Assembly: GCA_013416795.1 (NCBI GenBank)
Contig: RQSC01000196.1
Location: 9,973-38,666 of the forward strand
Reading direction: 5' to 3'
Source: Prasinococcaceae sp. CCMP 1430
Lineage: Eukaryota; Plantae; Prasinodermophyta
Length of the DNA stretch: 28,694 bases
Of the stretch, positions 6,747 through 24,223 are shown piece by piece. The notes under the pieces were generated by a model. That model saw only the letters and a list, made by a program, of their open reading frames with translations, was not told where the DNA came from and searched no databases. Position numbers and translations under genes: made by a program. The stretch's first letter is position 1, and every line of letters begins with the position of its first letter.

Positions 6747-8420
6747 GCGATCGCCCTGGACGGGTCGAATCACGTCTTCTACAGCAACCGCTCCGCGTGC
6801 TACGCCTCGCTGGGCAAGTTCGAGGAGGCGCTCGAGGACGGCCAGAGCTGCGTCAACATCAAGCCCGACTGGGCCAAGGGCTACGCGCGCAAGGGCGCCG
6901 CGCTGCACGGCCTGAAGCGCTACAACGATGCGCTTGCGGCGTACGAGGCGGGCCTCGCCATCGACGCCGACAGCGCCATGCTCAAGAGCGGCCTGGAGGA
7001 GGTCAAGCGCGCCAAGGAAGGGCCCTCGTTCGGCGGTGGCGCGGGCGGCCTGGGCGGGCTCTTCTCCTCGCCCGACATCTGGGGCAAACTGGCGACGAAC
7101 CCGCAGACGCGCGACCTCCTGCAGCAGCCTGACTTCGTTGCCAAGCTCCAGGCCATCCAGCAGAACCCAGCGGCCGCGGAGCAGCATCTCAACGACCCGC
7201 GCATCATGCAGGCGCTGGGCGTGGCCATGGGGGCCAACGTCATGAGCGGCGACCAGTTTCGCGACTCGATGGGCTCCGATCCAGAGGCCGCGGCCGCCGC
7301 GGAGGCGAAGCGCAAGGAAGAGGCCGAGAAGCGCAAGGAGGCGGAGGAGCAGGCCTCCAAGCGGAAAGCGGAGGAGGAGGCCGCCGCCGCGGAGGCCGCG
7401 CTGAGTCCCGACCAGAAGGCCAAACGCGCGCGCGCCGAGGAGGCGGAGGCAATCAAGGCGGAGGGCAACGCGCTCTACAAGTCGAAGCAGTTCGATGAGG
7501 CGCTCGAGAAGTACGCCAAGGCGTACGAGACGGACAATGAGAACATCACGTACCTCAACAACACGGCCGCAGTGTACTACGAGATGGGCAACTTCGAAAA
7601 GTGCCGCGAGACGTGCGACGCTGCCGTGGAGCGCGGTCGCGAGCTTCGCGCTGACTACAAACTGGTCGCAAAGGCGTTCGCGCGCAAGGGCAACGCGTTC
7701 AAGGCCGAGAACAAGCTCGAGGATGCGGTCGAGTGCTACCAGAAGTCGCTTACCGAGCACCGCACCGCGGACACGCTCAAGCGGCTCAACGACACCGAGA
7801 AGGCGATCAAGACGCGCGACGAGACCGCCTACCTGGACGACGACAAGGCGGAGGAGGCGCGCCAGCTTGGCAACGACGCCTTCAAGCGCCAGGACTATCC
7901 CGAGGCCGTCAAGCACTACACGGAGTCGATCAAGCGCAACCCGAAAGACCACCGCGTGTACTCGAACCGCGCGGCGTCGTACACCAAGCTCACCGCGCTC
8001 ACCGAGGCCCTCAAGGATGCGGAGAAGTGCATTGAGCTCGATCCCACTTTCGCCAAGGGCTACACGCGGAAGGCAACCGTCCAGTTCTTCATGAAGGAGT
8101 ACTCGAAGGCCATGGCGACGTATGAGGCGCTGCTCAAGGTGGACCCGCAGAACGCCGAGGCGCAGGACGGCCTCCGCCGCTGCGTGGACGCCATCAACCG
8201 CGGTAACCGTGGCGAGATGTCCGAGGCCGAGATGAAGGAGCGCCAAGAGAAGGCCATGGCTGACCCCGAGATCCAGGGCATATTGCAGGACCCCATCATG
8301 CGCCAGGTGCTCAACGACTTCCAGACGAACCCGAAGGCGGCGGCCGAGCACCAGCGCAACCCGGGCGTCATGGCCAAGATCCAGAAGCTCGTCGCCGCGG
8401 GCATCGTGCAGATGCGGTAG
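6747..8420 (+). CDS. STI1: Hsp70-Hsp90 organizing protein HOP/STI1 (TPR1-DP1-TPR2A-TPR2B-DP2); main exon only, first exon not found
   Basis: After acceptor ccgcAG (6746) the exon reads AIALDGSNHVFYSNRSACY..KPDWAKGYARKG, DP1 (HLNDPRIMQAL), KAEGNALYK, YQKSLTEHRT, YSNRAASYTKL and DP2 (DPEIQGILQDPIMRQVL..KLVAAGIV). TAG at 8418-8420. Confidence 0.95.
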   Translation, partial: AIALDGSNHVFYSNRSACYASLGKFEEALEDGQSCVNIKPDWAKGYARKGAALHGLKRYNDALAAYEAGLAIDADSAMLKSGLEEVKRAKEGPSFGGGAGGLGGLFSSPDIWGKLATNPQTRDLLQQPDFVAKLQAIQQNPAAAEQHLNDPRIMQALGVAMGANVMSGDQFRDSMGSDPEAAAAAEAKRKEEAEKRKEAEEQASKRKAEEEAAAAEAALSPDQKAKRARAEEAEAIKAEGNALYKSKQFDEALEKYAKAYETDNENITYLNNTAAVYYEMGNFEKCRETCDAAVERGRELRADYKLVAKAFARKGNAFKAENKLEDAVECYQKSLTEHRTADTLKRLNDTEKAIKTRDETAYLDDDKAEEARQLGNDAFKRQDYPEAVKHYTESIKRNPKDHRVYSNRAASYTKLTALTEALKDAEKCIELDPTFAKGYTRKATVQFFMKEYSKAMATYEALLKVDPQNAEAQDGLRRCVDAINRGNRGEMSEAEMKERQEKAMADPEIQGILQDPIMRQVLNDFQTNPKAAAEHQRNPGVMAKIQKLVAAGIVQMR

Positions 8421-8588
8421 CTCCCGAGCGAGGGGGTGCGGCGGCGGCAGCGGCAACAGGCTCGGTAATATGTATGGTTATGCGCGTGGGCGCGGCGAGG
8501 CACAACGCCGCGGCAAGCATCGGAGAGCGCGGCGATCGATTCACATCGGCCTACCGCTATATGGCCCGGTCGCATCAGCACAGCGCGC

Positions 8589-10543
8589 TCATTTCTCGAC
8601 GTCCCTGCCCACGGCGTCGCCACGCCGCACCCGTTGCTGCATCAGCGCTTGCACGGCTGGGGGAAAGTGGTCCGGCACCATCGAGTTGTCCACGACCAGG
8701 TGGTCCACACCAATCTCGCCGGAGTGGTGGAACATCTCGCCAAAGTCGAGGTACCTTGAAACGCGCGGTCCCATCGATGTTGAGGCCGCACGCGCGCGCG
8801 CGCGCGCGTTCGGAGCGTCAGCGCGGCCTCAGGCCGAGGGCGTTGGCGCGTTGAGGCGCAAGACAGCAGGGGCGCGCGCACGCACCACTTGACCTCAAAG
8901 GCGTTCCCCGAGGGATCCGTCAGGAACTGGGACAAACAGCTGTCGGGGTCGGAGGGAAAGAGCATGTTGTGTGGATCGATGTGATTGAACGGAGGCGCTC
9001 GGCCCGTCCGTGCCAAACACCAGAGATCCTCGACCGGTAGGCCGTGCTGAGCCATCGCCGTGTCCACACGGCTCCGGATGAGGTCGAAATTGATGAACGA
9101 CGTGTTCGGGCCAAAGTGCGGCATCGGCACCACCCCTTTGTTCGCCCCCATGTCGTGCGCCGAGTCGGTGGCCTTGTTTTCTCGCAAGGCCGGCGGCACA
9201 TACGTTCTGTTCGACCGCATACAGAGGAAGTGGCCGCACCATTCGCACTGAAGCCGGCTCGCGCCGTCCACTGCATCCTCGGAGAGCAGCTTCGCGCCCA
9301 GAGTATCGGTGTAGAAGTGCTTCGTGACGCGCAGCTGGTCCTTCTCAAGCTCGCGGGTCATAGCGGTCGTGATGGGCCGCCTGATTGAACGCGTGTCCTC
9401 TGCCAAGCTCGGTGACTGCCGGAACTCGAAACAAAACACAAATGGCACTGCTGGGTGTCTAGCCGTGTATTCGTCCCCGACGAGCGGCGAGACGAAGAGA
9501 ATCAGCGGCCAGCCATCGGGATCGCGGAAGCAGACGGCGCGGTCCGCCACGCCGCCGCCAAGCGCACCAGCGGCGCCCTTGACGTCCATCCACCGGAGCC
9601 CGGGTGACTTGGCGGCTGCGCGCTCCATCTGCTTGGCAAAGAAGGTGGGCTCGAGCACCACTCCGAAGCACGGGTACGGTATTTCGTCCAGTGAGATGGT
9701 GCCCGCCGCGCGCGGCAGCGCCCCTGCCAGTGCGCGCTCGGCCCCATCGGCGGGCGGTGTCAGCTCAGGCGGGCAGCGCTTCTTGTCAGCCCACGGCCCA
9801 TGGCCCGCCCTCCCGATCGGGGTATCCTCCTTGTGAAAGACGATGAACGAAGCGAAGGCGCCGTAGCTCGCCCACGCGGAGCCGTATGTGTCCTCCTCTT
9901 CCCCCGCGTGTGCCCGGTCCACGGTCTTGTAGAGGGGCCATCCCAAGACGCCGTTGTAAAAGGCAACGTTGGCCGGAATGTCGGCCGTCTCCAGGGCGAG
10001 GTGGCACGTCGCGAACCCGAGCTCGTTTTGCACGCACCCGTTGCTGCTCATGTACCTCCTCAGGAGAGCCTGCCGCCGCGGCCCCGCGTGAATTTGGTCC
10101 GGATTCATGCCCAGCGTCTTGCTGAACATGTTGAAGGCCTCGTCGCGGGTGAGCGAGGCCTCGTCGGCATCGACGTTGAAGGCCTCCACCAGCTGTTTGG
10201 CCTCCTCGAGGTCCGGGTCCAGTCCCACCTTCGCCATTGAGGCGTGCAATTCCTCGGCCGTTATTTTGCCGTCCCGATCTCGATCAATGAGCTGAAACAG
10301 CTCGTCCAACTGGCCCTGGTTGGTCTTCATCTCCCAGTCGATCACGACTCCCCCGCCGTCGCGGACCTCGCCATGCGACGTGGCCGCGAGCAGGCGAGCG
10401 ACGGAGGTCGACCAGAGCCGCCCGTCGCGGGTGACGGACGTGGCCGAACAGAGTACCACGCCTTGCTCATCGTCGTCGGCCGCTGCCGGATTGAAGCTGG
10501 CGATGGCGGCCCATGTCTTGACGCCGTGGCTCATCTTGGCCGC
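8589..10543 (-). CDS. In-frame continuation: rest of the degenerate PCS-like repeat, EF-hand pair and two tandem VOC/glyoxalase domains (COG3565-like); exons 10543-8886 and 8754-8589
   Basis: Canonical EF loop DRDRDGKITAEE. VOC1 has CHLALETADIPANVAFYNGVLG..PYPCFGVVL..FRDPDG; VOC2 has HFYTDTLG..GH..VPMPHFG..FLTDPSGNAFEVK. Removing intron 8885-8755 (GTGCGT..GCTGAC..TCAAG) gives DPSGNAFEVKWYLDFGEMF. TGA at 8589-8591. Confidence 0.8.
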
Positions 10544-11956
10544 CTACGTGTTCCCCAGCACGACGTGAGCGCCGCCGCGGGCCACGTTCGTGTCGAAGGG
10601 AAGGATGAGCACAGTGGTTCCCAGGTCCACGCGCGCCGCGGTCAGCGCCTCGCGGAAGCTGGCCACCGTCGTTCCAAAGCGGACGTGCCGCACCGCGAGC
10701 GCCTGCTTTGAGTTGACCATGTCGCGACTGGAGGCGAGCAGTGCGGCGGCGTGCGCCACGCTCTCCGACGTGCGAAACGTCCTGAGGTGGTCCACGTGCG
10801 ACTGTCGCGACTGCCGCATGCAGATCTCCAGGTCGATGCCGTTGATCCATCTCTGCACGACGTTGATCGCCAGCGAGAGCGCACACATGCCGCCCATGTT
10901 TGTGGTGCCGATGTGCGAGTCCCACTCGGGCGGGATGAAGCGACGCAGCATGAAGGCGGGGTGCCCGCCGGGAACGCTGCCGGCCCAGCTCACGCAGGTC
11001 GTGCCGACCGCGGCACGTCCCTTCCTCATGACGGCCTGGAGGCCGAGAGAGCGCTCCCTTTGCAATTGCGCGCGCTCCGAGGTCGCAGTGAAGCGAAGCA
11101 TCCCGCGCGAGCGGCCGCAGGAGTCGCGGTCGGCCATCGCGGCGTACATCTGCTCGATGGGGCATGACCAGAAGGCGCCGTACTTCAGCGGGTGCACGTC
11201 GGCCATCATGAGGTCGAGGGCGCCGCCTTCCGGGCCGCTGCACCGCTCCACGAGCTCGCCGATCGCCTTGAAGCTCGCGTCGAGGCCGAGGTCGACCATC
11301 GCGGCGTGGAGCTCGCGCTGCGCCCTCGTGCTGGCGGGGACCGCGCCCATCAGCAGGCTGAAGTGCCCGCCGCCACCCGTCGGCCAGCCGTGCGCCATCC
11401 CCGAGTGGAAGTTGAGCGCGAGCACGTCGTTCGCGCCGGCCGCAGCGGCGGCGATGCAAGCGGTGCGGAAGCCGGCAAGCGTATTGCCTGATAGCTCGTC
11501 GAAGTGGTAGCACTCGACGCTCACTGGCAGGCTGGCCCGTTCGACGTATCGCAGCGCCAGCTCGTGCGTCTCGGCCAACGTCATGCCGTCCCCGACCGCA
11601 GACTCGATGGGCACCTTCACCAGCGTGATCACGTCGTCCACGGAGGTCGGATGGCCCATCAGCGTCAGCGCGTGGGCGACGGCGGTGGTTTGGCACATGT
11701 TGAGCTCCTGCTGCACCTCGCTGGCGGCCTCGAGCTCGACGAAGCGCAGCGCCTCCTTGACGCCCGCGAACGACCGCTGCGCGGCGTCCGGGCCGCCCGC
11801 GCGCGCGTTGTGCGCGGCGAGCGCGGCTTCGACGCAGCTCTCGGCCTGCTCGCGGGTGTGCTGCTCAGACGGCACGCCCTGGCGCCCGCCGCTGCCCGCC
11901 TTGGCCGTCCGCCCGGCGGGGGGCGCCGGCGCCACCTGCGAGACTCCACATCCCAT
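10544..11956 (-). CDS. Phytochelatin-synthase-like (papain-fold) protein with N-terminal MGCxxS acylation motif; N-terminal part of the fused locus, ending at an in-frame TAG
   Basis: QQELNMC (Q82/C88), GMTLAE, FR, LNF, GGGHFS (H198), MMADVHPLKYGAFW (D253) and SRGML parallel the PCS motifs QxxxxxC, GHFSP, LDVARFKYPPHW and RG. A second degenerate repeat starts at about residue 340. Confidence 0.8.
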   Translation of the reverse strand: MGCGVSQVAPAPPAGRTAKAGSGGRQGVPSEQHTREQAESCVEAALAAHNARAGGPDAAQRSFAGVKEALRFVELEAASEVQQELNMCQTTAVAHALTLMGHPTSVDDVITLVKVPIESAVGDGMTLAETHELALRYVERASLPVSVECYHFDELSGNTLAGFRTACIAAAAAGANDVLALNFHSGMAHGWPTGGGGHFSLLMGAVPASTRAQRELHAAMVDLGLDASFKAIGELVERCSGPEGGALDLMMADVHPLKYGAFWSCPIEQMYAAMADRDSCGRSRGMLRFTATSERAQLQRERSLGLQAVMRKGRAAVGTTCVSWAGSVPGGHPAFMLRRFIPPEWDSHIGTTNMGGMCALSLAINVVQRWINGIDLEICMRQSRQSHVDHLRTFRTSESVAHAAALLASSRDMVNSKQALAVRHVRFGTTVASFREALTAARVDLGTTVLILPFDTNVARGGAHVVLGNT

Positions 11957-13002: not shown

Positions 13003-16000
13003 CTAGGAGAGCGCGACGCTCTGCGAGACGTGGATGCTGCTGATCTCGCTCCAGCGGCTCACGTACGAGTCCTCGGCGCGTCCGCCGCCCTCGGCGCCGC
13101 GCTCGCGGCGGCGTTGACGGCCGCGGTCCTCCGACGGCGCAGTCTCCAGCCAGCTGCTCGGGTCGGCCGCCGCCGTCGCGCGCACGCTGTCGAGAAGCTC
13201 CTTGCAGGGGGTCAGGCCCGCCCCGGAGCCCGAGCGCCGCGCGTGTGATGGCGGCCGGCGCGAGCCCGCGGCGCTCGCGCGGTGCGATTGGCCCTTGACA
13301 GGGCTGAGGATGCCTGCCTTGCGCCCGCTGCCGCCGACGTCGCGCCGCCCGCGGCCCGTGGGCTGCTGCGACGACGCGCGGTGGTGCGCGGACGCGGAGC
13401 CGCCCGCGCCGCCGCCGACGACTCTCGCGAGCACCCGGCGCAGCTCCCTGGCCGCCGACGGCTCGCGGCCGTCCTCCGGGCGCATCTCGTCGCCGAGCGC
13501 GCGGCTCAGCGTGCCGCGAAAGTAGGCTGTGAGCGCCTCCAGAAGGGCGGTGGCGGCCTGCGGCGAGGCGTCCCCCTTGCGACGCCTGTCAGGGTGGCCG
13601 TACGCAACGCCCGCATCGGCGCCGCGCGTGGGGCCGAGCCCGCCGTTGTACAGCGCTGCGCGGAGCGTCTGCGCGGACCGCGCCCACACGCCGCGGCACA
13701 CCTCCTTGAACACGCGCGGCGCGAGCGCGCCTGCGAGCGGGCCCACGGCGTCGTCGAGGTCTGCGGGCAGCCCAGGCGACGTGCCCGTACCCGCATTGCC
13801 CCTGCAGAGCGCAGCGTACATCTCGGGCGCCTCGGCGAGCACGGCGGACACGTCCGCCAGCGACGCGGCCATGGCCACGCCGCCACCGCCAAGGGCGGCG
13901 CGCGCAACCTCGTCCTCGAGCTCGGTCACCGCCGCGGCGTACAGGCCCTCGAGCGTGAGCGCCGATGCGCGCAGCTGCGCGCTGGCGGCCGCAGCTGCGG
14001 CCTTCGCGCGCGCGCCACATTCCTCCGTCGGTGCGCCCTCCGCGAGCTCGCGCAACGCGGCATGCACGGAGCGGCGCGCGGCATCGAGCATGTGCTTGAG
14101 CGTGTTGAGGTACGCAGCACGCGCGGGGGTCACCAGGCGGAAGCGGTCGCGCACGAGCGCGTGCTCGGCAGAGCGCGCGCCACCGCGCGGCGAGCCGGGC
14201 GAGTCGGCCAATGGCTCGCCGCCCAGGCAGGCCGTGAGGCGTCCGCACGCGCGGGCAACCTTCTCAAGGCTCTTGCGCATCGACTCGGCGGCGGAGAGCG
14301 ATGCCTCGGCCTCTCTGACCTGAGCCCACCACTCAACCAGCGTCTCGAGCGCAGCCGCGTCGATGTCGGCGGCCGCCTTCCCAAGCGCGGGAAACACCTC
14401 GTCGGGCCACGTGGCTGCCAGTGGGGCAAGCGGTGCCACACTGTCGACGAGGCCGTGGTACGCGTCGGCCACGAAGCTCAGGCAGCCGCTGCCTCTGGCG
14501 CCGCTCGTCAGCGCGTAGGTCGCGCCGTTCGCCAGCGGCGCGCCGCGGCGTGCGGGCGGCGGCGGCGGCACCGACGCCATCCTCACGAAGCGCTGAGCCA
14601 GCCCGGTGACCCACTGCTGCACCGCCTCGCCGTAGGCATCCATGCCATCCAGCACGACATGGGGCAGTCCCCAGCTCGAAAGCGCGATGCGGCACTCGCG
14701 CAGCGCAACGGCAGCGCGCACCGACGCCGCGATGGCCTCGGGCGAGACAGTTGTACAGGCGGCGGCCTCCGCCGCCGCGCGCGCGGCAATGCACAGCCTC
14801 CGCCCGAGGACCGCCGCGGCAATGACCGCGAAGCTCGGCGCGTCCTCGACCGGAACGTCGTTCCAAGAGCGAACGATGCGCTCCACTGCGAGATCGTTCC
14901 GCACCTCTTCTGCAACGGCGCCTGCGAGCAGCGCCAGACGCTCTGCGGTGACTGCTGTCGGGTCAGGGCGCGCGCGCTCCGCCTCGATGCAAGCGTCAGA
15001 CCGCGGCGATTCGTCGTCACTCGACGCGCCCGAGCTGCTCGAGTCCCCCGGTCCTTCGGCGTGGTCTGTGCCAGCAGCCAACTTCAGCCCAGAGCGGCAC
15101 GTTCTCGTGCATGCACCCTGCTGTGTGGCAGCGGCGGCCCTCACGCTCATCTCGCGCCACAGCGACTCAGCGCCCTTTCGCAGGCTTGCGTCCGACTCGG
15201 TCAAAACGCCGAGCATGTTGCGCAGGCGAAGCGCCGCGTGCAGGGAGCGCAGGGAGCTGCTTTCGCGCCGACCGAGCGTGCGGTACTCGGCCAGCGCGCG
15301 ATCGCAGAGCGCGACAGCTCTCTCCGAGGCCTCCGCGAGCAGCACGCGCTCCCGGCGCGCGAGTGCGTCCGTGGAGACCGATGCCGACGCGACTCGGGTG
15401 GGTTCGCCGAGTAATTCTTCGAGGAGCGCCATGCATTCGGCAGAGCAACTTGCAAAGCCGTGGAGGCAATGCAGCGCGTAGCGGATCGCCTGGTAGTGCC
15501 TGCTTACGCCAAAGCGCAGGGCAACCGAGTCCAGCAGCCACTGCCACTCGCTCGCACAGCGAAGATGGCGCGGGCCCACCAGCGACGTGTGCAGCGCGGC
15601 ACACACGAGCGCATCGTACGTCTCGTGTGCCGATACGGGCGCGAAGGGGACAGCCACAGCCCCCCTCGCCACTGCCGAGGTGGTGTCGAGCGTACCCTGC
15701 GCTAGGACGTGCTCATCCACATCGACTGGGCCATGGGCTTCCTCGCCGGCGACGCCGCTGTGCGCGTAGCTTTCCGCTTCCACCACGCGCAGGAGAAGCG
15801 CAGCCTCGCCGGCGAACTCGCCCTCGCAGTCCCCTTCAACTCGCGTGAAGCGAAGGGTGTGCACCGCCCCGTCGTGGCTCTCCCGGGGGCGCCGATCTCG
15901 GACCGGCAGGCACCGCATGGAAACGAGGTCGGGGCGGTCATCGGCACCGCAGACCTCGTCGTCTTCGTCGGACTCGGTGGCAAGCGGGACGCTCTCGGGT

Positions 16001-17823
16001 GCGTCGCGCCCAGCGGCGGCCAGCGCCGCGCGCAGAGCGGGCCAGGGCACCGCTGCCGAGAAGCACGCGCCGCCTGCACGCACCCAGACCGTGAGCCCCG
16101 CACCGCGAGGCTGCTCGCCATACGAGGGCAACGCGTCCGTCGCGCGTGGCTCCCGGCCTTCTGCAGCATCGTCGCTGCCAGGCGCCTCGAAAGGCACGAG
16201 GTAGCGCGACGCGGCGTCACCGAGGTCGAGCGCGCATTTGACGGGCTCGCGCCTCCGCATTGGTGCCGAGGCCCTCACCGCGTCGTCCCCCTCGCCGAGC
16301 GACACGCTCACACTCGCACCCTTGCGAAAGAGAAGCGCGCGCGATCGGTGCCGCGAGACGGCGCCCTTCAGATCGGCCACCGTGAGGAGGAGCTCGCGCG
16401 GGGGCTGCGACTGTGGTTCGGCCTCGGGCTCGTCTTCCCCGTCGTCGTCCTCGGTCTCAGTGCAGGACTCCTCCGCAAACATGCCGGCGTTGCCGTCCGC
16501 ATCGAGCAAGGGCCCGTCCAGCGCGAGTGCGCATCGCAGAGCCGCACCGTCGTCGTCGACGAAGACGAGGGCGTGCCGCGCCCCCGGCTCGTGCGGCTCG
16601 GTGCGCAGCGCCGTGTGCACCGCCGCGCGGGTGGCCGCGTCGGCGGCCGCGAGGCGATGCGCCAGAGGCACGTGGCGCGGGGCTTCGGGGAGGTATGCCT
16701 CGCGCTTTCTCTCACCGACGGAGTACGACTGCCTCCCCGTCGCGCCGGGGCGAGGAGGCGCCGCGGCGTCGGACTCACTGGGGCTGTCGAATACGGGGGC
16801 GCGCATCGTCTTGCCGACGCTCTGCAGCACGTGGAGGGCCACGCGCTGGTAGGGCGTTGTCGCATTGGCGGGCGTGACCGGCAGCCGCAGCTCCGCGCCC
16901 AAGGGCAGGTGCTCCGGCAACGCCGACCGCGCCTGGGGCTTCTCCGCGCGCGCGCCACGCGCCCGGCTGCGGGAGCCAGCCCGCGCGCTGCCACCTGCAT
17001 GGCCGGCGTCCTCATCGTCGCTCGGTCCAACGCGCTCATGTTCGACGCGCGCCTCCTCTTGATGCTCCGGCGTGTGCTCGAGGCGGACGTCGTCAGCGTC
17101 GACCGCCTCGCGCTCGGCCTGAAGCGCCGGCGCCATGGTCGGCGTTGCAGCGTCGGCGCTGTAGCGCCTCTGCGAGGGAGCCTGCGCGTGCTCACTGCCG
17201 CCCAACAAGCTCGCGAGCCCGCCGCCAAGCGAGGCGATCGAATTGGCCAGGTAGCCCCCAGGGCCACGGCGTCGAGAGCCCTGCGGCGTCGCGTGCGACG
17301 GAGAGGCCGCGCCGCGCTTCTCGAAGCTGCCGCGAGTCGACGCGCGCCGCGCCCCGCCGTTGGCATTCTCGGCGCTCGGCGCGTGCATGTCGTTCTCATC
17401 GCGCGCCGACTCGCGCCTTCGCGCATCGGCGACCGCCGGCGAGTATCCACCGAATCCGGTGCCGAAGCTCGGCTCGCGCGGCGCGACGCCCGCGCTGGAC
17501 GCCGGCGAGGCGGCCTCGGGCGCGTCGGCCATCGGCGGGGTCACCTCGCAGCCAACCGGCGCGTCCTCGTCGCCGACGGACGCGCGCCAGCTCGCGCCGT
17601 GCGAGGCGTTGTCTGGCGCATGCGCGTCGGCGTGCAGTGCGCCCAGAGCCCCGTCCCCCTCGGCGTCGCCATCGATCCCCGCCGCCGGCGTCACCGGCGG
17701 CGCGTGCGCGCCCTCCTCGAAGGGCGACCGAATGCCGTCGGAGAACACGCCCGACGAGCGCACGGACGCGGCCGACGGCGTGCCGCCGCCGCCGCCGAGC
17801 GACGCGGAGGCGCGCGCGGACGC
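13003..17823 (-). CDS. Large uncharacterized protein of the At4g24610/At5g48310 plant family (helical, Munc13/PATROL-like by inference) with a long disordered N-terminus; start uncertain
   Basis: Uninterrupted frame of ~1600 codons. PVSAHETYDALV..WQWLLDSVALRFGVSRHYQAIRY..ECMALLEELL..AEYRTL and RVFKEVCRGVW..LGDEMRPEDGREP..ELRRVL resemble the conserved blocks of this family as I recall them. A possible acceptor (ccgcAG) lies at 17824; the first in-frame ATG is at 17532. Confidence 0.7.
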   Translation of the reverse strand, partial: ASARASASLGGGGGTPSAASVRSSGVFSDGIRSPFEEGAHAPPVTPAAGIDGDAEGDGALGALHADAHAPDNASHGASWRASVGDEDAPVGCEVTPPMADAPEAASPASSAGVAPREPSFGTGFGGYSPAVADARRRESARDENDMHAPSAENANGGARRASTRGSFEKRGAASPSHATPQGSRRRGPGGYLANSIASLGGGLASLLGGSEHAQAPSQRRYSADAATPTMAPALQAEREAVDADDVRLEHTPEHQEEARVEHERVGPSDDEDAGHAGGSARAGSRSRARGARAEKPQARSALPEHLPLGAELRLPVTPANATTPYQRVALHVLQSVGKTMRAPVFDSPSESDAAAPPRPGATGRQSYSVGERKREAYLPEAPRHVPLAHRLAAADAATRAAVHTALRTEPHEPGARHALVFVDDDGAALRCALALDGPLLDADGNAGMFAEESCTETEDDDGEDEPEAEPQSQPPRELLLTVADLKGAVSRHRSRALLFRKGASVSVSLGEGDDAVRASAPMRRREPVKCALDLGDAASRYLVPFEAPGSDDAAEGREPRATDALPSYGEQPRGAGLTVWVRAGGACFSAAVPWPALRAALAAAGRDAPESVPLATESDEDDEVCGADDRPDLVSMRCLPVRDRRPRESHDGAVHTLRFTRVEGDCEGEFAGEAALLLRVVEAESYAHSGVAGEEAHGPVDVDEHVLAQGTLDTTSAVARGAVAVPFAPVSAHETYDALVCAALHTSLVGPRHLRCASEWQWLLDSVALRFGVSRHYQAIRYALHCLHGFASCSAECMALLEELLGEPTRVASASVSTDALARRERVLLAEASERAVALCDRALAEYRTLGRRESSSLRSLHAALRLRNMLGVLTESDASLRKGAESLWREMSVRAAAATQQGACTRTCRSGLKLAAGTDHAEGPGDSSSSGASSDDESPRSDACIEAERARPDPTAVTAERLALLAGAVAEEVRNDLAVERIVRSWNDVPVEDAPSFAVIAAAVLGRRLCIAARAAAEAAACTTVSPEAIAASVRAAVALRECRIALSSWGLPHVVLDGMDAYGEAVQQWVTGLAQRFVRMASVPPPPPARRGAPLANGATYALTSGARGSGCLSFVADAYHGLVDSVAPLAPLAATWPDEVFPALGKAAADIDAAALETLVEWWAQVREAEASLSAAESMRKSLEKVARACGRLTACLGGEPLADSPGSPRGGARSAEHALVRDRFRLVTPARAAYLNTLKHMLDAARRSVHAALRELAEGAPTEECGARAKAAAAAASAQLRASALTLEGLYAAAVTELEDEVARAALGGGGVAMAASLADVSAVLAEAPEMYAALCRGNAGTGTSPGLPADLDDAVGPLAGALAPRVFKEVCRGVWARSAQTLRAALYNGGLGPTRGADAGVAYGHPDRRRKGDASPQAATALLEALTAYFRGTLSRALGDEMRPEDGREPSAARELRRVLARVVGGGAGGSASAHHRASSQQPTGRGRRDVGGSGRKAGILSPVKGQSHRASAAGSRRPPSHARRSGSGAGLTPCKELLDSVRATAAADPSSWLETAPSEDRGRQRRRERGAEGGGRAEDSYVSRWSEISSIHVSQSVALS

Positions 17824-17914
17824 CTGCGGCGGAGCAGGCGGCGAAACCCACCCCGGGTGTAGCCCGCCAGACTTCGGGGTGTCGCCCGCGCATGGTTTGA
17901 GTTTTTGTGCAAAC

Positions 17915-18241
17915 CCGGGTGTACGCGCTCCGAACCCCGGTGTAGCCCGCGAGACCTCGGCGGGGTCGCCACCGCGCGGGTTGAGGTTTCGTGCTCTGTT
18001 GACCGGCGCGGGCGCCGTTATTTCGGGTAGGGTCTGTCGTAGCTCATTTGGTAATGACGCGCGTACATACCCTGTTGTGGTGCGTACATCTGGGTTATGA
18101 TTTCGTACCACACCGGGTGTACGCGCTCCGAACCCCGGTGTAGCCCGCGAGACCTCGGCGGGGTCGCCACCCCGCGGGTTGAGGTTTCGTGCTCTGTTGA
18201 CCGGCGCGGGCGCCCTTATTTCGGGTAGGGTCTGTCGCAGC
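17915..18241. repeat. 129-bp direct repeat, 2 copies (17915-18043 and 18113-18241), 198-bp period, 3 mismatches
   Basis: Direct alignment of the two copies. Confidence 0.92.
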
Positions 18242-18628
18242 CGTTGGCTGCCGGGGCGCGCCGATCGGCCGCCGGCCACACAAAGAGCGCGAAAAGCGCA
18301 GCGCGGGCGGAAAGTGGCAACTTACGGGGTCTGAAATTGTAAATCTCCGCATTTTTAATGTATTTAATTACATTTGCGTATCATCAGAAGCGAGGGTGTG
18401 ACAAATTACCCGTAATTTTGTGTGAGACTGTGTGTCGTGTGTGTGTTGTGTGTGTGACACTGTGCGTGTGACACTGTGTGTGCGTGTGTGTGTGTGTGTG
18501 TCACACCCGTGCACACACACACACGTGCCGTCCGCCATGCCGGAGGACGCCAAGGAGGAGGCCTCGCCCGCCGCGCCCGCCGCGCCCGCGCCGTTCACCT
18601 TCGGCGCGGGCGCGGCCGGCGGCGGCCG

Positions 18629-23871: not shown

Positions 23872-24223
23872 TCAGGGCACCAGCACCGTGTCGACCGCCT
23901 GCGGCAGCGTCTCGGGATAGTCGAGATTGTAGTGCAGCCCGCGGCTCTCCTTGCGGTGGAGCGCCGAGCGGACGATCAGGTCGGCGCTTTCCAGCAGGTT
24001 GCGCAGCTCGATCAGGTCGGGCGTCACCCGGAAATGGCCGTAATAGTCCGCCACTTCCTCGCGCAGCATCTTGATCCGGTGCGCCGCGCGCTCGAGCCGC
24101 TTGGTGGTGCGCACGATGCCGACATAGTTCCACATGAAGCGCCGGATCTCGGTCCAGTTCTGCTTGATCACCACTTCCTCATCGGAATCGGTGACCCGGC
24201 TCTCGTCCCAGGGCCGGATCGCG
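23872..24223 (-). CDS. nadB: C-terminal fragment of a bacterial L-aspartate oxidase (alphaproteobacterial-like)
   Basis: [71 protein letters not shown] is the proteobacterial NadB C-terminal domain. The FAD-binding domain is absent. Confidence 0.9.

What the first reader, a model, noticed from the sequence alone, without database searches (positions are those of the whole stretch)
8589..11956. Acylated phytochelatin-synthase-like / pseudo-PCS / EF-hand / tandem glyoxalase (VOC) fusion: candidate Ca2+-responsive thiol-chemistry system
Seen: a single frame of ~1078 codons after removing one intron and reading through one TAG. It runs MGCGVS, PCS-like domain with Q82/C88/H198/D253, second PCS-like repeat, canonical EF loop, then two VOC domains. 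Established: PCS enzymes are papain-fold transpeptidases acting on glutathione; eukaryotic PCS normally carry a Cys-rich C-terminal domain instead; several VOC enzymes (glyoxalase I, FosA) also use glutathione; MGCxxS directs myristoylation/palmitoylation. Inference: a membrane-tethered, calcium-regulated two-step enzyme for glutathione or conjugate processing, or for making an unknown metabolite. I know of no described protein with this architecture.
Basis: partly seen in the sequence, partly recalled or inferred. Interest (0 to 1): 0.88.

Follow-up and report, generated by a model that had tools for sequence, protein, structure and literature searches.

The report
Phytochelatin-synthase-like enzyme fused to metalloenzyme pair
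A marine green alga and a few rare bacteria share an undescribed ~1,000-residue enzyme that joins a probable glutathione-trimming domain to a metal-dependent domain pair; the copy in this sequenced strain is broken by a stop mutation that wild populations lack.

Summary
The architecture is real; the read-through is not. The minus-strand gene (11956-8589, one 131-nt intron) encodes MGCGVS, a papain-fold PCS-like domain (Q82/C88/H198/D253; Z 20.5 to Nostoc NsPCS), a catalytically dead repeat, an EF-hand pair and two VOC domains. The TAG (codon 471) is in contigs of two DNA runs, but 12 of 12 wild alleles (96-98% identical) have Glu there and a Tara contig reads GAG: a strain-specific nonsense allele in Prasinoderma coloniale. 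The same fusion is one open frame in a second alga and in about 25 proteins from bacterial contigs and MAGs (6 GTDB genomes), without conserved neighbours. It is not a canonical phytochelatin synthase: the acceptor-site Arg (AtPCS1 R152) is Ser. The VOC pair keeps one composite His/His/His/Glu site. Elsewhere the same PCS-like module is fused to gamma-glutamylcyclotransferase plus a cysteine-decarboxylase flavoprotein, in three domain orders, which points to gamma-Glu-Cys chemistry. Best model: glutathione or its conjugate loses Gly, coupled to one metal-dependent step; the product is unknown. Ca2+ control and acylation are plausible algal refinements, untested. No paper describing it was found. 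The scan index covers this genome only; it held one note on the same TAG.

The parts
11939..11956 (-). Start codon and MGCGVS, a predicted N-myristoylation/S-palmitoylation motif; eukaryotic copies only
   Evidence: same in wild allele L009; MGCGAS in the second alga after removing a 148-nt intron; absent from the bacterial fusions
11087..11734 (-). PCS-like repeat 1 (about residues 75-290), papain fold, Q82/C88/H198/D253; a lineage-specific insert of about 30 residues lies between H198 and D253
   Evidence: Z 20.5, rmsd 2.4, 183 aligned to NsPCS 2btw; conservation
10334..10924 (-). Pseudo-PCS repeat 2 (about residues 345-541): papain fold, catalytic Cys position is G355, His and Asp lost; conserved E-A-x-x-L/M-S-H-G loop
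10544..10546 (-). Premature TAG at codon 471 (GAG, Glu, in the wild allele L009): strain-specific nonsense allele
10127..10309 (-). EF-hand pair (about residues 550-610): first loop D558-E569 canonical, second loop non-canonical
9488..10015 (-). VOC domain 1 (about residues 648-823): H652 and H708 invariant; its own C-terminal ligand positions are C763 and P817 (dead half-site)
8886..9454 (-). VOC domain 2 (about residues 835-1024): H947 invariant, E1021 near-invariant; first-strand His lost; closest solved single domain 3rri
8755..8885 (-). 131-nt GT..AG intron (donor GTGCGT, internal GCTGAC); 129 nt in wild allele L009; absent in the second alga
   Evidence: not crossed by any RNA contig
8589..8754 (-). 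Exon 2: end of VOC2 and a conserved C-terminal extension, TGA stop
   Evidence: 50-79% identical in bacterial and algal relatives, 100% in wild alleles

Best explanation
SHOWN: the locus is a nonsense allele (Glu471 to TAG) of a conserved gene whose intact product is PCS-like domain + dead PCS repeat + EF-hand pair + VOC-VOC. The intact gene occurs in wild Prasinoderma populations, a second alga and scattered bacteria (confidence about 0.9). In this strain the stop cuts repeat 2 before its last core strands and removes EF and VOC, so the allele is probably null. INFERRED (about 0.5): the intact enzyme works on gamma-glutamyl-cysteinyl peptides. C88 attacks the Cys-Gly bond of glutathione or a glutathione S-conjugate, releases Gly and forms a gamma-Glu-Cys acyl-enzyme, which is hydrolysed or passed to a non-glutathione acceptor, because the Arg that builds the phytochelatin acceptor site is Ser. 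The dead repeat stands in for the second subunit of the NsPCS homodimer as a scaffold or binding module. The two VOC domains fold as one pseudo-dimer with a single metal site (H652, H708, H947, E1021) that does one further step on the same thiol compound. I favour a step after deglycination (tailoring of gamma-Glu-Cys, possibly Fe/O2-dependent), by analogy with the sister fusions, where the partner enzymes act on gamma-Glu-Cys. WEAKER (about 0.3): Ca2+ at EF1 tunes the coupling and acylation anchors the algal form.
For: Allele: GAG in L009 vs TAG in the window at 98.2% DNA identity; Glu in 12/12 wild alleles and in 54/58 family members; TAG absent from about 2,200 codons of four neighbouring genes that hold 177 Glu codons, except as the Hop terminator. 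Fusion: P0026, P0028, P0169-P0193; every intact locus that reaches far enough upstream has PCS1, PCS2 and both VOC in one frame. Fold: pTM 0.91 model, NsPCS far ahead of other papain folds; Q 52/54, C 50/54, H 57/58, D 54/58, K 52/58, Y 57/58 conserved, acceptor Arg 0/58 among the listed states (Ser 41, Thr 8, Val 6). NsPCS itself is mainly a deglycinase and a dimer, and R152A leaves 0.02% PC synthesis (PMC3855540). The same module is fused to GGACT + HFCD flavoprotein + ankyrin in P0047, P0049, P0062 and P0075 in three domain orders; HFCD enzymes need a C-terminal Cys, which deglycination creates (own knowledge). VOC pair: best matches are single-chain pseudo-dimers, PcpA Z 16.1, maize glyoxalase I Z 15.9, GLOD4 Z 15.7; PcpA ligands His11/His227/Glu276 (PMC3204407) lie in the same order along the chain as H652/H947/E1021.
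Against: No assay, no substrate, no conserved gene neighbourhood. Identity to NsPCS is only about 20%, and papain folds also serve as amide-forming enzymes unrelated to glutathione (AziU2/U3, CtaG, CcbD). The GGCT/HFCD fusions sit in a different branch of the family from the VOC fusions. The order of the two steps is by analogy only. No RNA of this strain could be laid, so low-level read-through is not formally excluded.
Confidence: 0.5

Rival explanations
1. Conjugate-then-trim detoxification: the VOC site first adds glutathione to an electrophile (FosA-like) or isomerises a hemithioacetal (glyoxalase-I-like), then the PCS-like domain removes Gly. It shares the deglycination step with the best explanation and differs in order and purpose.
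For: Glyoxalase I, GLOD4 and FosA are among the fold matches; weak FosA HMM hits far below cut-off; PCS enzymes process GS-conjugates (PMC11314372).
Against: Glyoxalase I needs two Glu bases (own knowledge); here one is His (H708). The FosA scores are 15-17 bits against cut-offs of 275-310. The gene is rare and often lost, unlike housekeeping detoxification genes.
Confidence: 0.2
2. Not glutathione at all: a two-enzyme natural-product or catabolic module in which the papain fold is an acyltransferase or amidase for another substrate and the VOC pair is a PcpA-like ring-cleaving dioxygenase.
For: Top VOC match is PcpA; JGI labels members 'extradiol dioxygenase family protein'; papain-fold amide-forming enzymes appear in the fold lists.
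Against: NsPCS stands well above all other papain folds (Z 20.5 vs 14.8 or less); GMTL, DVxxxKY and D-S-x-x-R-x-R-G motifs are shared with NsPCS; sister fusions carry GGCT; no biosynthetic cluster nearby.
Confidence: 0.17
3. A true, metal- or Ca2+-regulated phytochelatin synthase in which the dead repeat and EF-hand replace the Cys-rich regulatory tail.
For: Complete Q/C/H/D set plus K258/Y259, equal to AtPCS1 K185/Y186.
Against: AtPCS1 R152 and Y55 equivalents are Ser and Cys/Met across the family; R152 substitutions abolish synthesis (PMC3855540). Score below the Pfam cut-off for the window copy.
Confidence: 0.08
4. The TAG is functional in this strain: programmed read-through, recoding, or stop-restart at M474 giving two proteins.
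For: An in-frame ATG lies three codons after the stop, and the genome annotation starts a 603-residue model there. Only 12 private amino-acid changes and no frameshift.
Against: All wild alleles have Glu; the stop cuts inside a folded domain; the context is TAG-G, not a known leaky one (own knowledge); M474 is the family's L/M motif position, not an added start; TAG is a normal terminator here. Broken copies also occur in bacteria (L002, L003, L020).
Confidence: 0.05

Closest known systems
NsPCS / Alr0975 (Nostoc PCS-like deglycinase; PF05023; PDB 2btw, 2bu3)
   Same: Papain fold (Z 20.5, rmsd 2.4), Gln oxyanion hole, Cys-His-Asp triad, GMTL and DVxxxKY motifs.
   Different: About 20% identity; R173 replaced by Ser; covalent dead repeat; fused EF and VOC domains.
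Eukaryotic phytochelatin synthases (AtPCS1)
   Same: Catalytic residues, K185 and Y186 equivalents.
   Different: No Cys-rich C-terminal domain, no R152, no Y55; a tandem pseudo-domain instead. The 2024 algal PCS survey (PMC11314372) has no occurrence of EF-hand, glyoxalase, tandem or Prasinoderma.
Single-chain VOC pseudo-dimers: PcpA/LinE hydroquinone dioxygenases, maize glyoxalase I, GLOD4
   Same: Four beta-alpha-beta-beta-beta modules in one chain, site shared between first and last module (Z 15-16).
   Different: 11-17% identity; putative His/His/His/Glu ligand set; long inserts; fused behind a PCS-like module.
3rri-type small VOC proteins (COG3565, 'predicted extradiol dioxygenase'; family name from memory)
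   Same: Best single-domain fold match of VOC2 (Z 9.0, 22% identity); PHFG and DPSGNxxExK motifs.
   Different: Those are about 135-residue homodimers of unknown function; no sequence-level hit was obtained.
PCS-like + HFCD flavoprotein + ankyrin + GGCT fusions (P0047, P0049 Biecheleria cincta, P0062, P0075; found here, no paper found)
   Same: Same active-plus-dead PCS-like module.
   Different: Partner enzymes are a cysteine-decarboxylase flavoprotein and a gamma-glutamylcyclotransferase, not VOC; separate branch.

Membership tests
PCS superfamily (PF05023, papain fold) | Papain/PCS fold | tested here: met
   (model of the 76%-identical algal orthologue P0172)
PCS superfamily (PF05023, papain fold) | Gln oxyanion hole + Cys-His-Asp triad | tested here: met
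   Q82/C88/H198/D253
PCS superfamily (PF05023, papain fold) | Pfam gathering score 24.9 | tested here: inconclusive
   window piece 23.3 bits; intact relatives 27-41 bits
Canonical phytochelatin synthase (EC 2.3.2.15) | Acceptor-site Arg152 (with Lys185, Tyr55) | tested here: not met
   Ser185 at R152, Met87 at Y55; Lys kept
Canonical phytochelatin synthase (EC 2.3.2.15) | Cys-rich C-terminal domain (eukaryotic type) | tested here: not met
   replaced by a second papain-fold repeat
Canonical phytochelatin synthase (EC 2.3.2.15) | Makes (gamma-Glu-Cys)n-Gly from glutathione | not testable with these tools
   needs an assay
VOC superfamily | Paired beta-alpha-beta-beta-beta modules | tested here: met
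VOC superfamily | Conserved metal ligands at the canonical strand positions | tested here: met
   H652, H708, H947 invariant and E1021 near-invariant in 28 sequences; geometry not measured
Glyoxalase I | Two Glu ligands acting as catalytic bases | tested here: not met
   His708 at the first Glu position, inferred from motif position; criterion from own knowledge
FosA glutathione transferases | NCBIfam FosA cut-off | tested here: not met
   15-17 bits vs 275-310
PcpA/LinE hydroquinone dioxygenases | His/His/Glu Fe(II) site across first and last module | tested here: inconclusive
   order of ligands fits, identity 13%, second-shell residues not checked
EF-hand Ca2+ sensors | Canonical 12-residue loop | tested here: met
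   EF1 in both algae and in P0191-P0193; EF2 non-canonical in the algae; both degenerate in the largest bacterial clade
Programmed stop read-through / recoding | Stop conserved across alleles or species, or TAG recoded genome-wide | tested here: not met

The most novel reading that the evidence does not exclude
The active-plus-dead PCS-like clade is the entry enzyme of an unrecognised family of glutathione-derived biosynthetic assembly lines. It exposes the C-terminal Cys of gamma-Glu-Cys, which is then tailored either by a 3-His-1-Glu VOC oxygenase (this fusion) or by an oxidative Cys decarboxylase plus gamma-glutamylcyclotransferase (sister fusions), giving an unknown low-molecular-weight thiol or sulfur metabolite in bacteria and algae, under Ca2+ or cyclic-nucleotide control.
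Probability: 0.27. Interest if true: 0.78.

Novelty: new variant of a known kind. Interest (0 to 1): 0.57.

Why it matters
What PCS-like enzymes do besides binding heavy metals is an open question (PMC11314372). Here is a clade that lacks the phytochelatin acceptor site, carries its own dead partner domain, and is repeatedly fused to other thiol or gamma-glutamyl enzymes. The fusions name testable partner reactions and may also give a first function to a class of uncharacterised VOC domains. The wild-versus-culture alleles give a natural knockout in Prasinoderma, and they show that the reference annotation (a 603-residue half gene) misrepresents the wild gene.

Tried and rejected
Sequencing error or misassembly: rejected, two contigs span the locus without a difference. 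TAG recoded as Glu: rejected. An intron removing the TAG: rejected, relatives are collinear through the site with one residue at that place. A DNA-pattern scan of JGI metagenomes around the TAG found nothing; the wild alleles came from protein searches. A single-sequence scan of GTDB found nothing; the alignment scan found 6 genomes. Gene neighbourhoods are not conserved. HHalign did not link VOC1 to VOC2 (prob 0.6%, shallow profiles); both rest on Pfam and the fold model. PDB and plasmid sequence searches for VOC2 gave nothing significant. Paper searches for the architecture, for the GGCT/flavoprotein fusions and for COG3565 gave no description; the library lacks most subscription journals, and the NsPCS structure paper could not be opened. 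Contig L001 (P0024) looks chimeric and was not used for context. Direction of gene transfer was not decided: the trees are unrooted and quick. As the operators asked, the spliced or read-through protein was never joined for a search or fold; pieces were searched apart, and intact natural relatives (P0172, P0026) served as proxies.
Full report
OBSERVATION. On the minus strand a frame opens at 11956 with MGCGVS, meets one TAG at 10546-10544 (codon 471), continues open to a GT donor at 8885, resumes after an AG at 8755 and ends at TGA 8591-8589: 1078 codons counting the TAG. Searched piece by piece, the part before the stop hits Phytochelatin (E 4e-5) and the part after hits EF-hand (2e-7) and Glyoxalase (9e-8). 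One contig in each of two public runs covers the locus with no substitution or gap, so neither the TAG nor the join is an assembly error; those runs may be the source of this DNA. A seawater metatranscriptome holds 96-99% identical fragments, none over the TAG or across the intron, so transcription and splicing are not shown by reads. The spliced or read-through protein was not joined for any search; intact natural relatives were used instead.

ORGANISM AND THE STOP. The post-stop part is 100% identical to EukProt Prasinoderma coloniale PRCOL_00006827-RA, a 603-residue model that starts at M474. A Tara Oceans contig (L009) is 98.2% identical over 3,984 nt and reads GAG where the window reads TAG. 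All 12 wild alleles that cover the site have Glu, and Glu stands there in 54 of 58 aligned family members. TAG is not recoded: four neighbouring genes hold 177 Glu codons and one TAG, the Hop terminator. The window allele has 12 other private residues and no frameshift, and differs from wild alleles at 13-22 positions (39 for the most distant) against 5-30 among the wild ones, so the loss looks recent, perhaps in culture (inference). The stop removes the last core strands of repeat 2, so the allele is probably null. Deleted or truncated copies also occur in bacterial contigs (L002, L003, L020): the gene is dispensable and often lost.

THE FAMILY. The full order PCS-like, pseudo-PCS, EF, VOC, VOC is one open frame in about 27 proteins of 925-1146 residues. 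Two clusters are algal: the wild Prasinoderma alleles and a second alga, 71-79% identical, which has MGCGAS joined by a 148-nt intron and lacks the 3' intron. The rest come from bacterial contigs and MAGs: Alcaligenaceae, Kofleriaceae, Alphaproteobacteria, Xanthomonadales, other Gammaproteobacteria, Rhodobiaceae. Only 6 of 185,579 GTDB genomes matched, and two of these are 99.9% identical proteins under different taxa, so one is probably misbinned. Neighbours are not conserved. In trees of both halves the algal pair joins one bacterial clade (P0026, P0169-P0171) with SH-aLRT 100, apart from the other bacterial clades. That fits transfer of the whole fusion between bacteria and this algal lineage; the direction is not shown. 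The PCS-like + pseudo-PCS module also exists alone as a 450-570-residue protein, for example in the red alga Pyropia yezoensis.

PCS MODULE. The model of the second alga's module is confident (pLDDT 89.5, pTM 0.91). Repeat 1 matches NsPCS at Z 20.5, rmsd 2.4 over 183 residues; repeat 2 matches other papain folds at Z 12-15, and the repeats are homologous (99.4%). Repeat 1 keeps Q, C, H, D and the Lys and Tyr after the Asp; repeat 2 has Gly or Glu for the Cys, and in the algal copies neither His nor Asp. The Arg that shapes the acceptor site (NsPCS R173, AtPCS1 R152) is Ser, Thr or Val in 55 of 58 members, and Y55 is Cys or Met; AtPCS1 R152A keeps 0.02% activity, and NsPCS is a dimeric enzyme that mainly removes Gly from glutathione (PMC3855540). 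So it probably works like NsPCS in the first half-reaction but is not a canonical phytochelatin synthase. Independent support for gamma-Glu-Cys substrates: four other proteins fuse the module to a gamma-glutamylcyclotransferase, an HFCD flavoprotein and ankyrins, in three domain orders. Their flavoprotein keeps the catalytic His motif but has Asn or Ser where phosphopantothenoylcysteine decarboxylase has its reducing Cys, as in EpiD-type oxidative decarboxylases (motifs; comparison from own knowledge).

VOC PAIR. The model (pLDDT 75, pTM 0.82) matches single-chain pseudo-dimers: PcpA Z 16.1, maize glyoxalase I 15.9, 1zsw 15.8, GLOD4 15.7, and for VOC2 alone 3rri (Foldseek). Across 28 sequences H652 and H708 (first module) and H947 (last module) are invariant and E1021 nearly so, while the complementary positions are C763, P817 and a non-His first strand of VOC2. 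This reads as one live His/His/His/Glu site and one dead site. PcpA uses His11, His227 and Glu276 in the same order (PMC3204407). Glyoxalase I chemistry needs two Glu (own knowledge), and FosA profiles score far below cut-off. The geometry was not measured.

EF-HAND AND ACYLATION. EF1 is canonical in both algae and in one bacterial clade, partial in the sister clade and degenerate in the largest clade. The MGC motif is limited to eukaryotic copies. Both are optional, not defining.

MECHANISM. Shown: fold, catalytic residues, dead repeat, fusion, allele status. Inferred: Gly removal from glutathione or a conjugate through a C88 acyl-enzyme, coupled to one metal-dependent step on the same thiol compound, most likely afterwards (0.5). 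Rivals: conjugate-then-trim detoxification (0.2), a non-glutathione module (0.17), true phytochelatin synthase (0.08), functional stop (0.05).

NOVELTY. No paper in the library describes the architecture, and the 2024 survey of algal PCS does not mention it; coverage of subscription journals is incomplete. All domains belong to known superfamilies; the clade, the pseudo-dimer and its recurring fusions appear undescribed. Verdict: new variant of a known kind, interest 0.57. The read-through aspect is ordinary (nonsense allele); the family-level lead is the value.

Noticed in passing
P0047, P0049 (Biecheleria cincta), P0062 (L016:771-4397), P0075: The same PCS-like module fused to HFCD flavoprotein + ankyrin + gamma-glutamylcyclotransferase in three domain orders; the flavoprotein lacks the reducing Cys. 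P0044 has a weak cNMP-binding hit in front of the module. A candidate glutathione-derived pathway that deserves its own study.
   Followed up: partly
P0068, P0078, P0082 and about 20 similar hits: Proteins of 900-1,400 residues with 3-6 separate PCS-like stretches and no other Pfam domain in those scanned: a multi-repeat subfamily.
   Followed up: no
window 23875-24170 (minus strand): A fragment matching the fumarate reductase/L-aspartate oxidase C-terminus (E 1.5e-17), bacterial NadB-like by eye, sits in frame at the end of an unrelated algal ORF beside a GT repeat and an N gap: probably an assembly chimera.
   Followed up: partly
window 8888-8885: Two GT donors 3 nt apart; the EukProt model uses the upstream one and loses a Trp/Phe that all relatives keep.
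   Followed up: yes
window 8418-8591: The gene ends 170 nt from the convergent Hop/Sti1 gene. Other neighbours: TOM20, P5A-ATPase, dihydroorotate dehydrogenase, and a 1758-residue ORF (13003-18279) with no Pfam hit.
   Followed up: no
L002:962-2997, L003:400-1275, L020:4526-6146: Bacterial copies with internal deletions, frameshifts or truncation after repeat 1; the gene decays repeatedly.
   Followed up: partly
L001:1-5781: Contig looks chimeric: bacterial genes, then the fusion gene cut short, then AT-rich unrelated DNA.
   Followed up: partly
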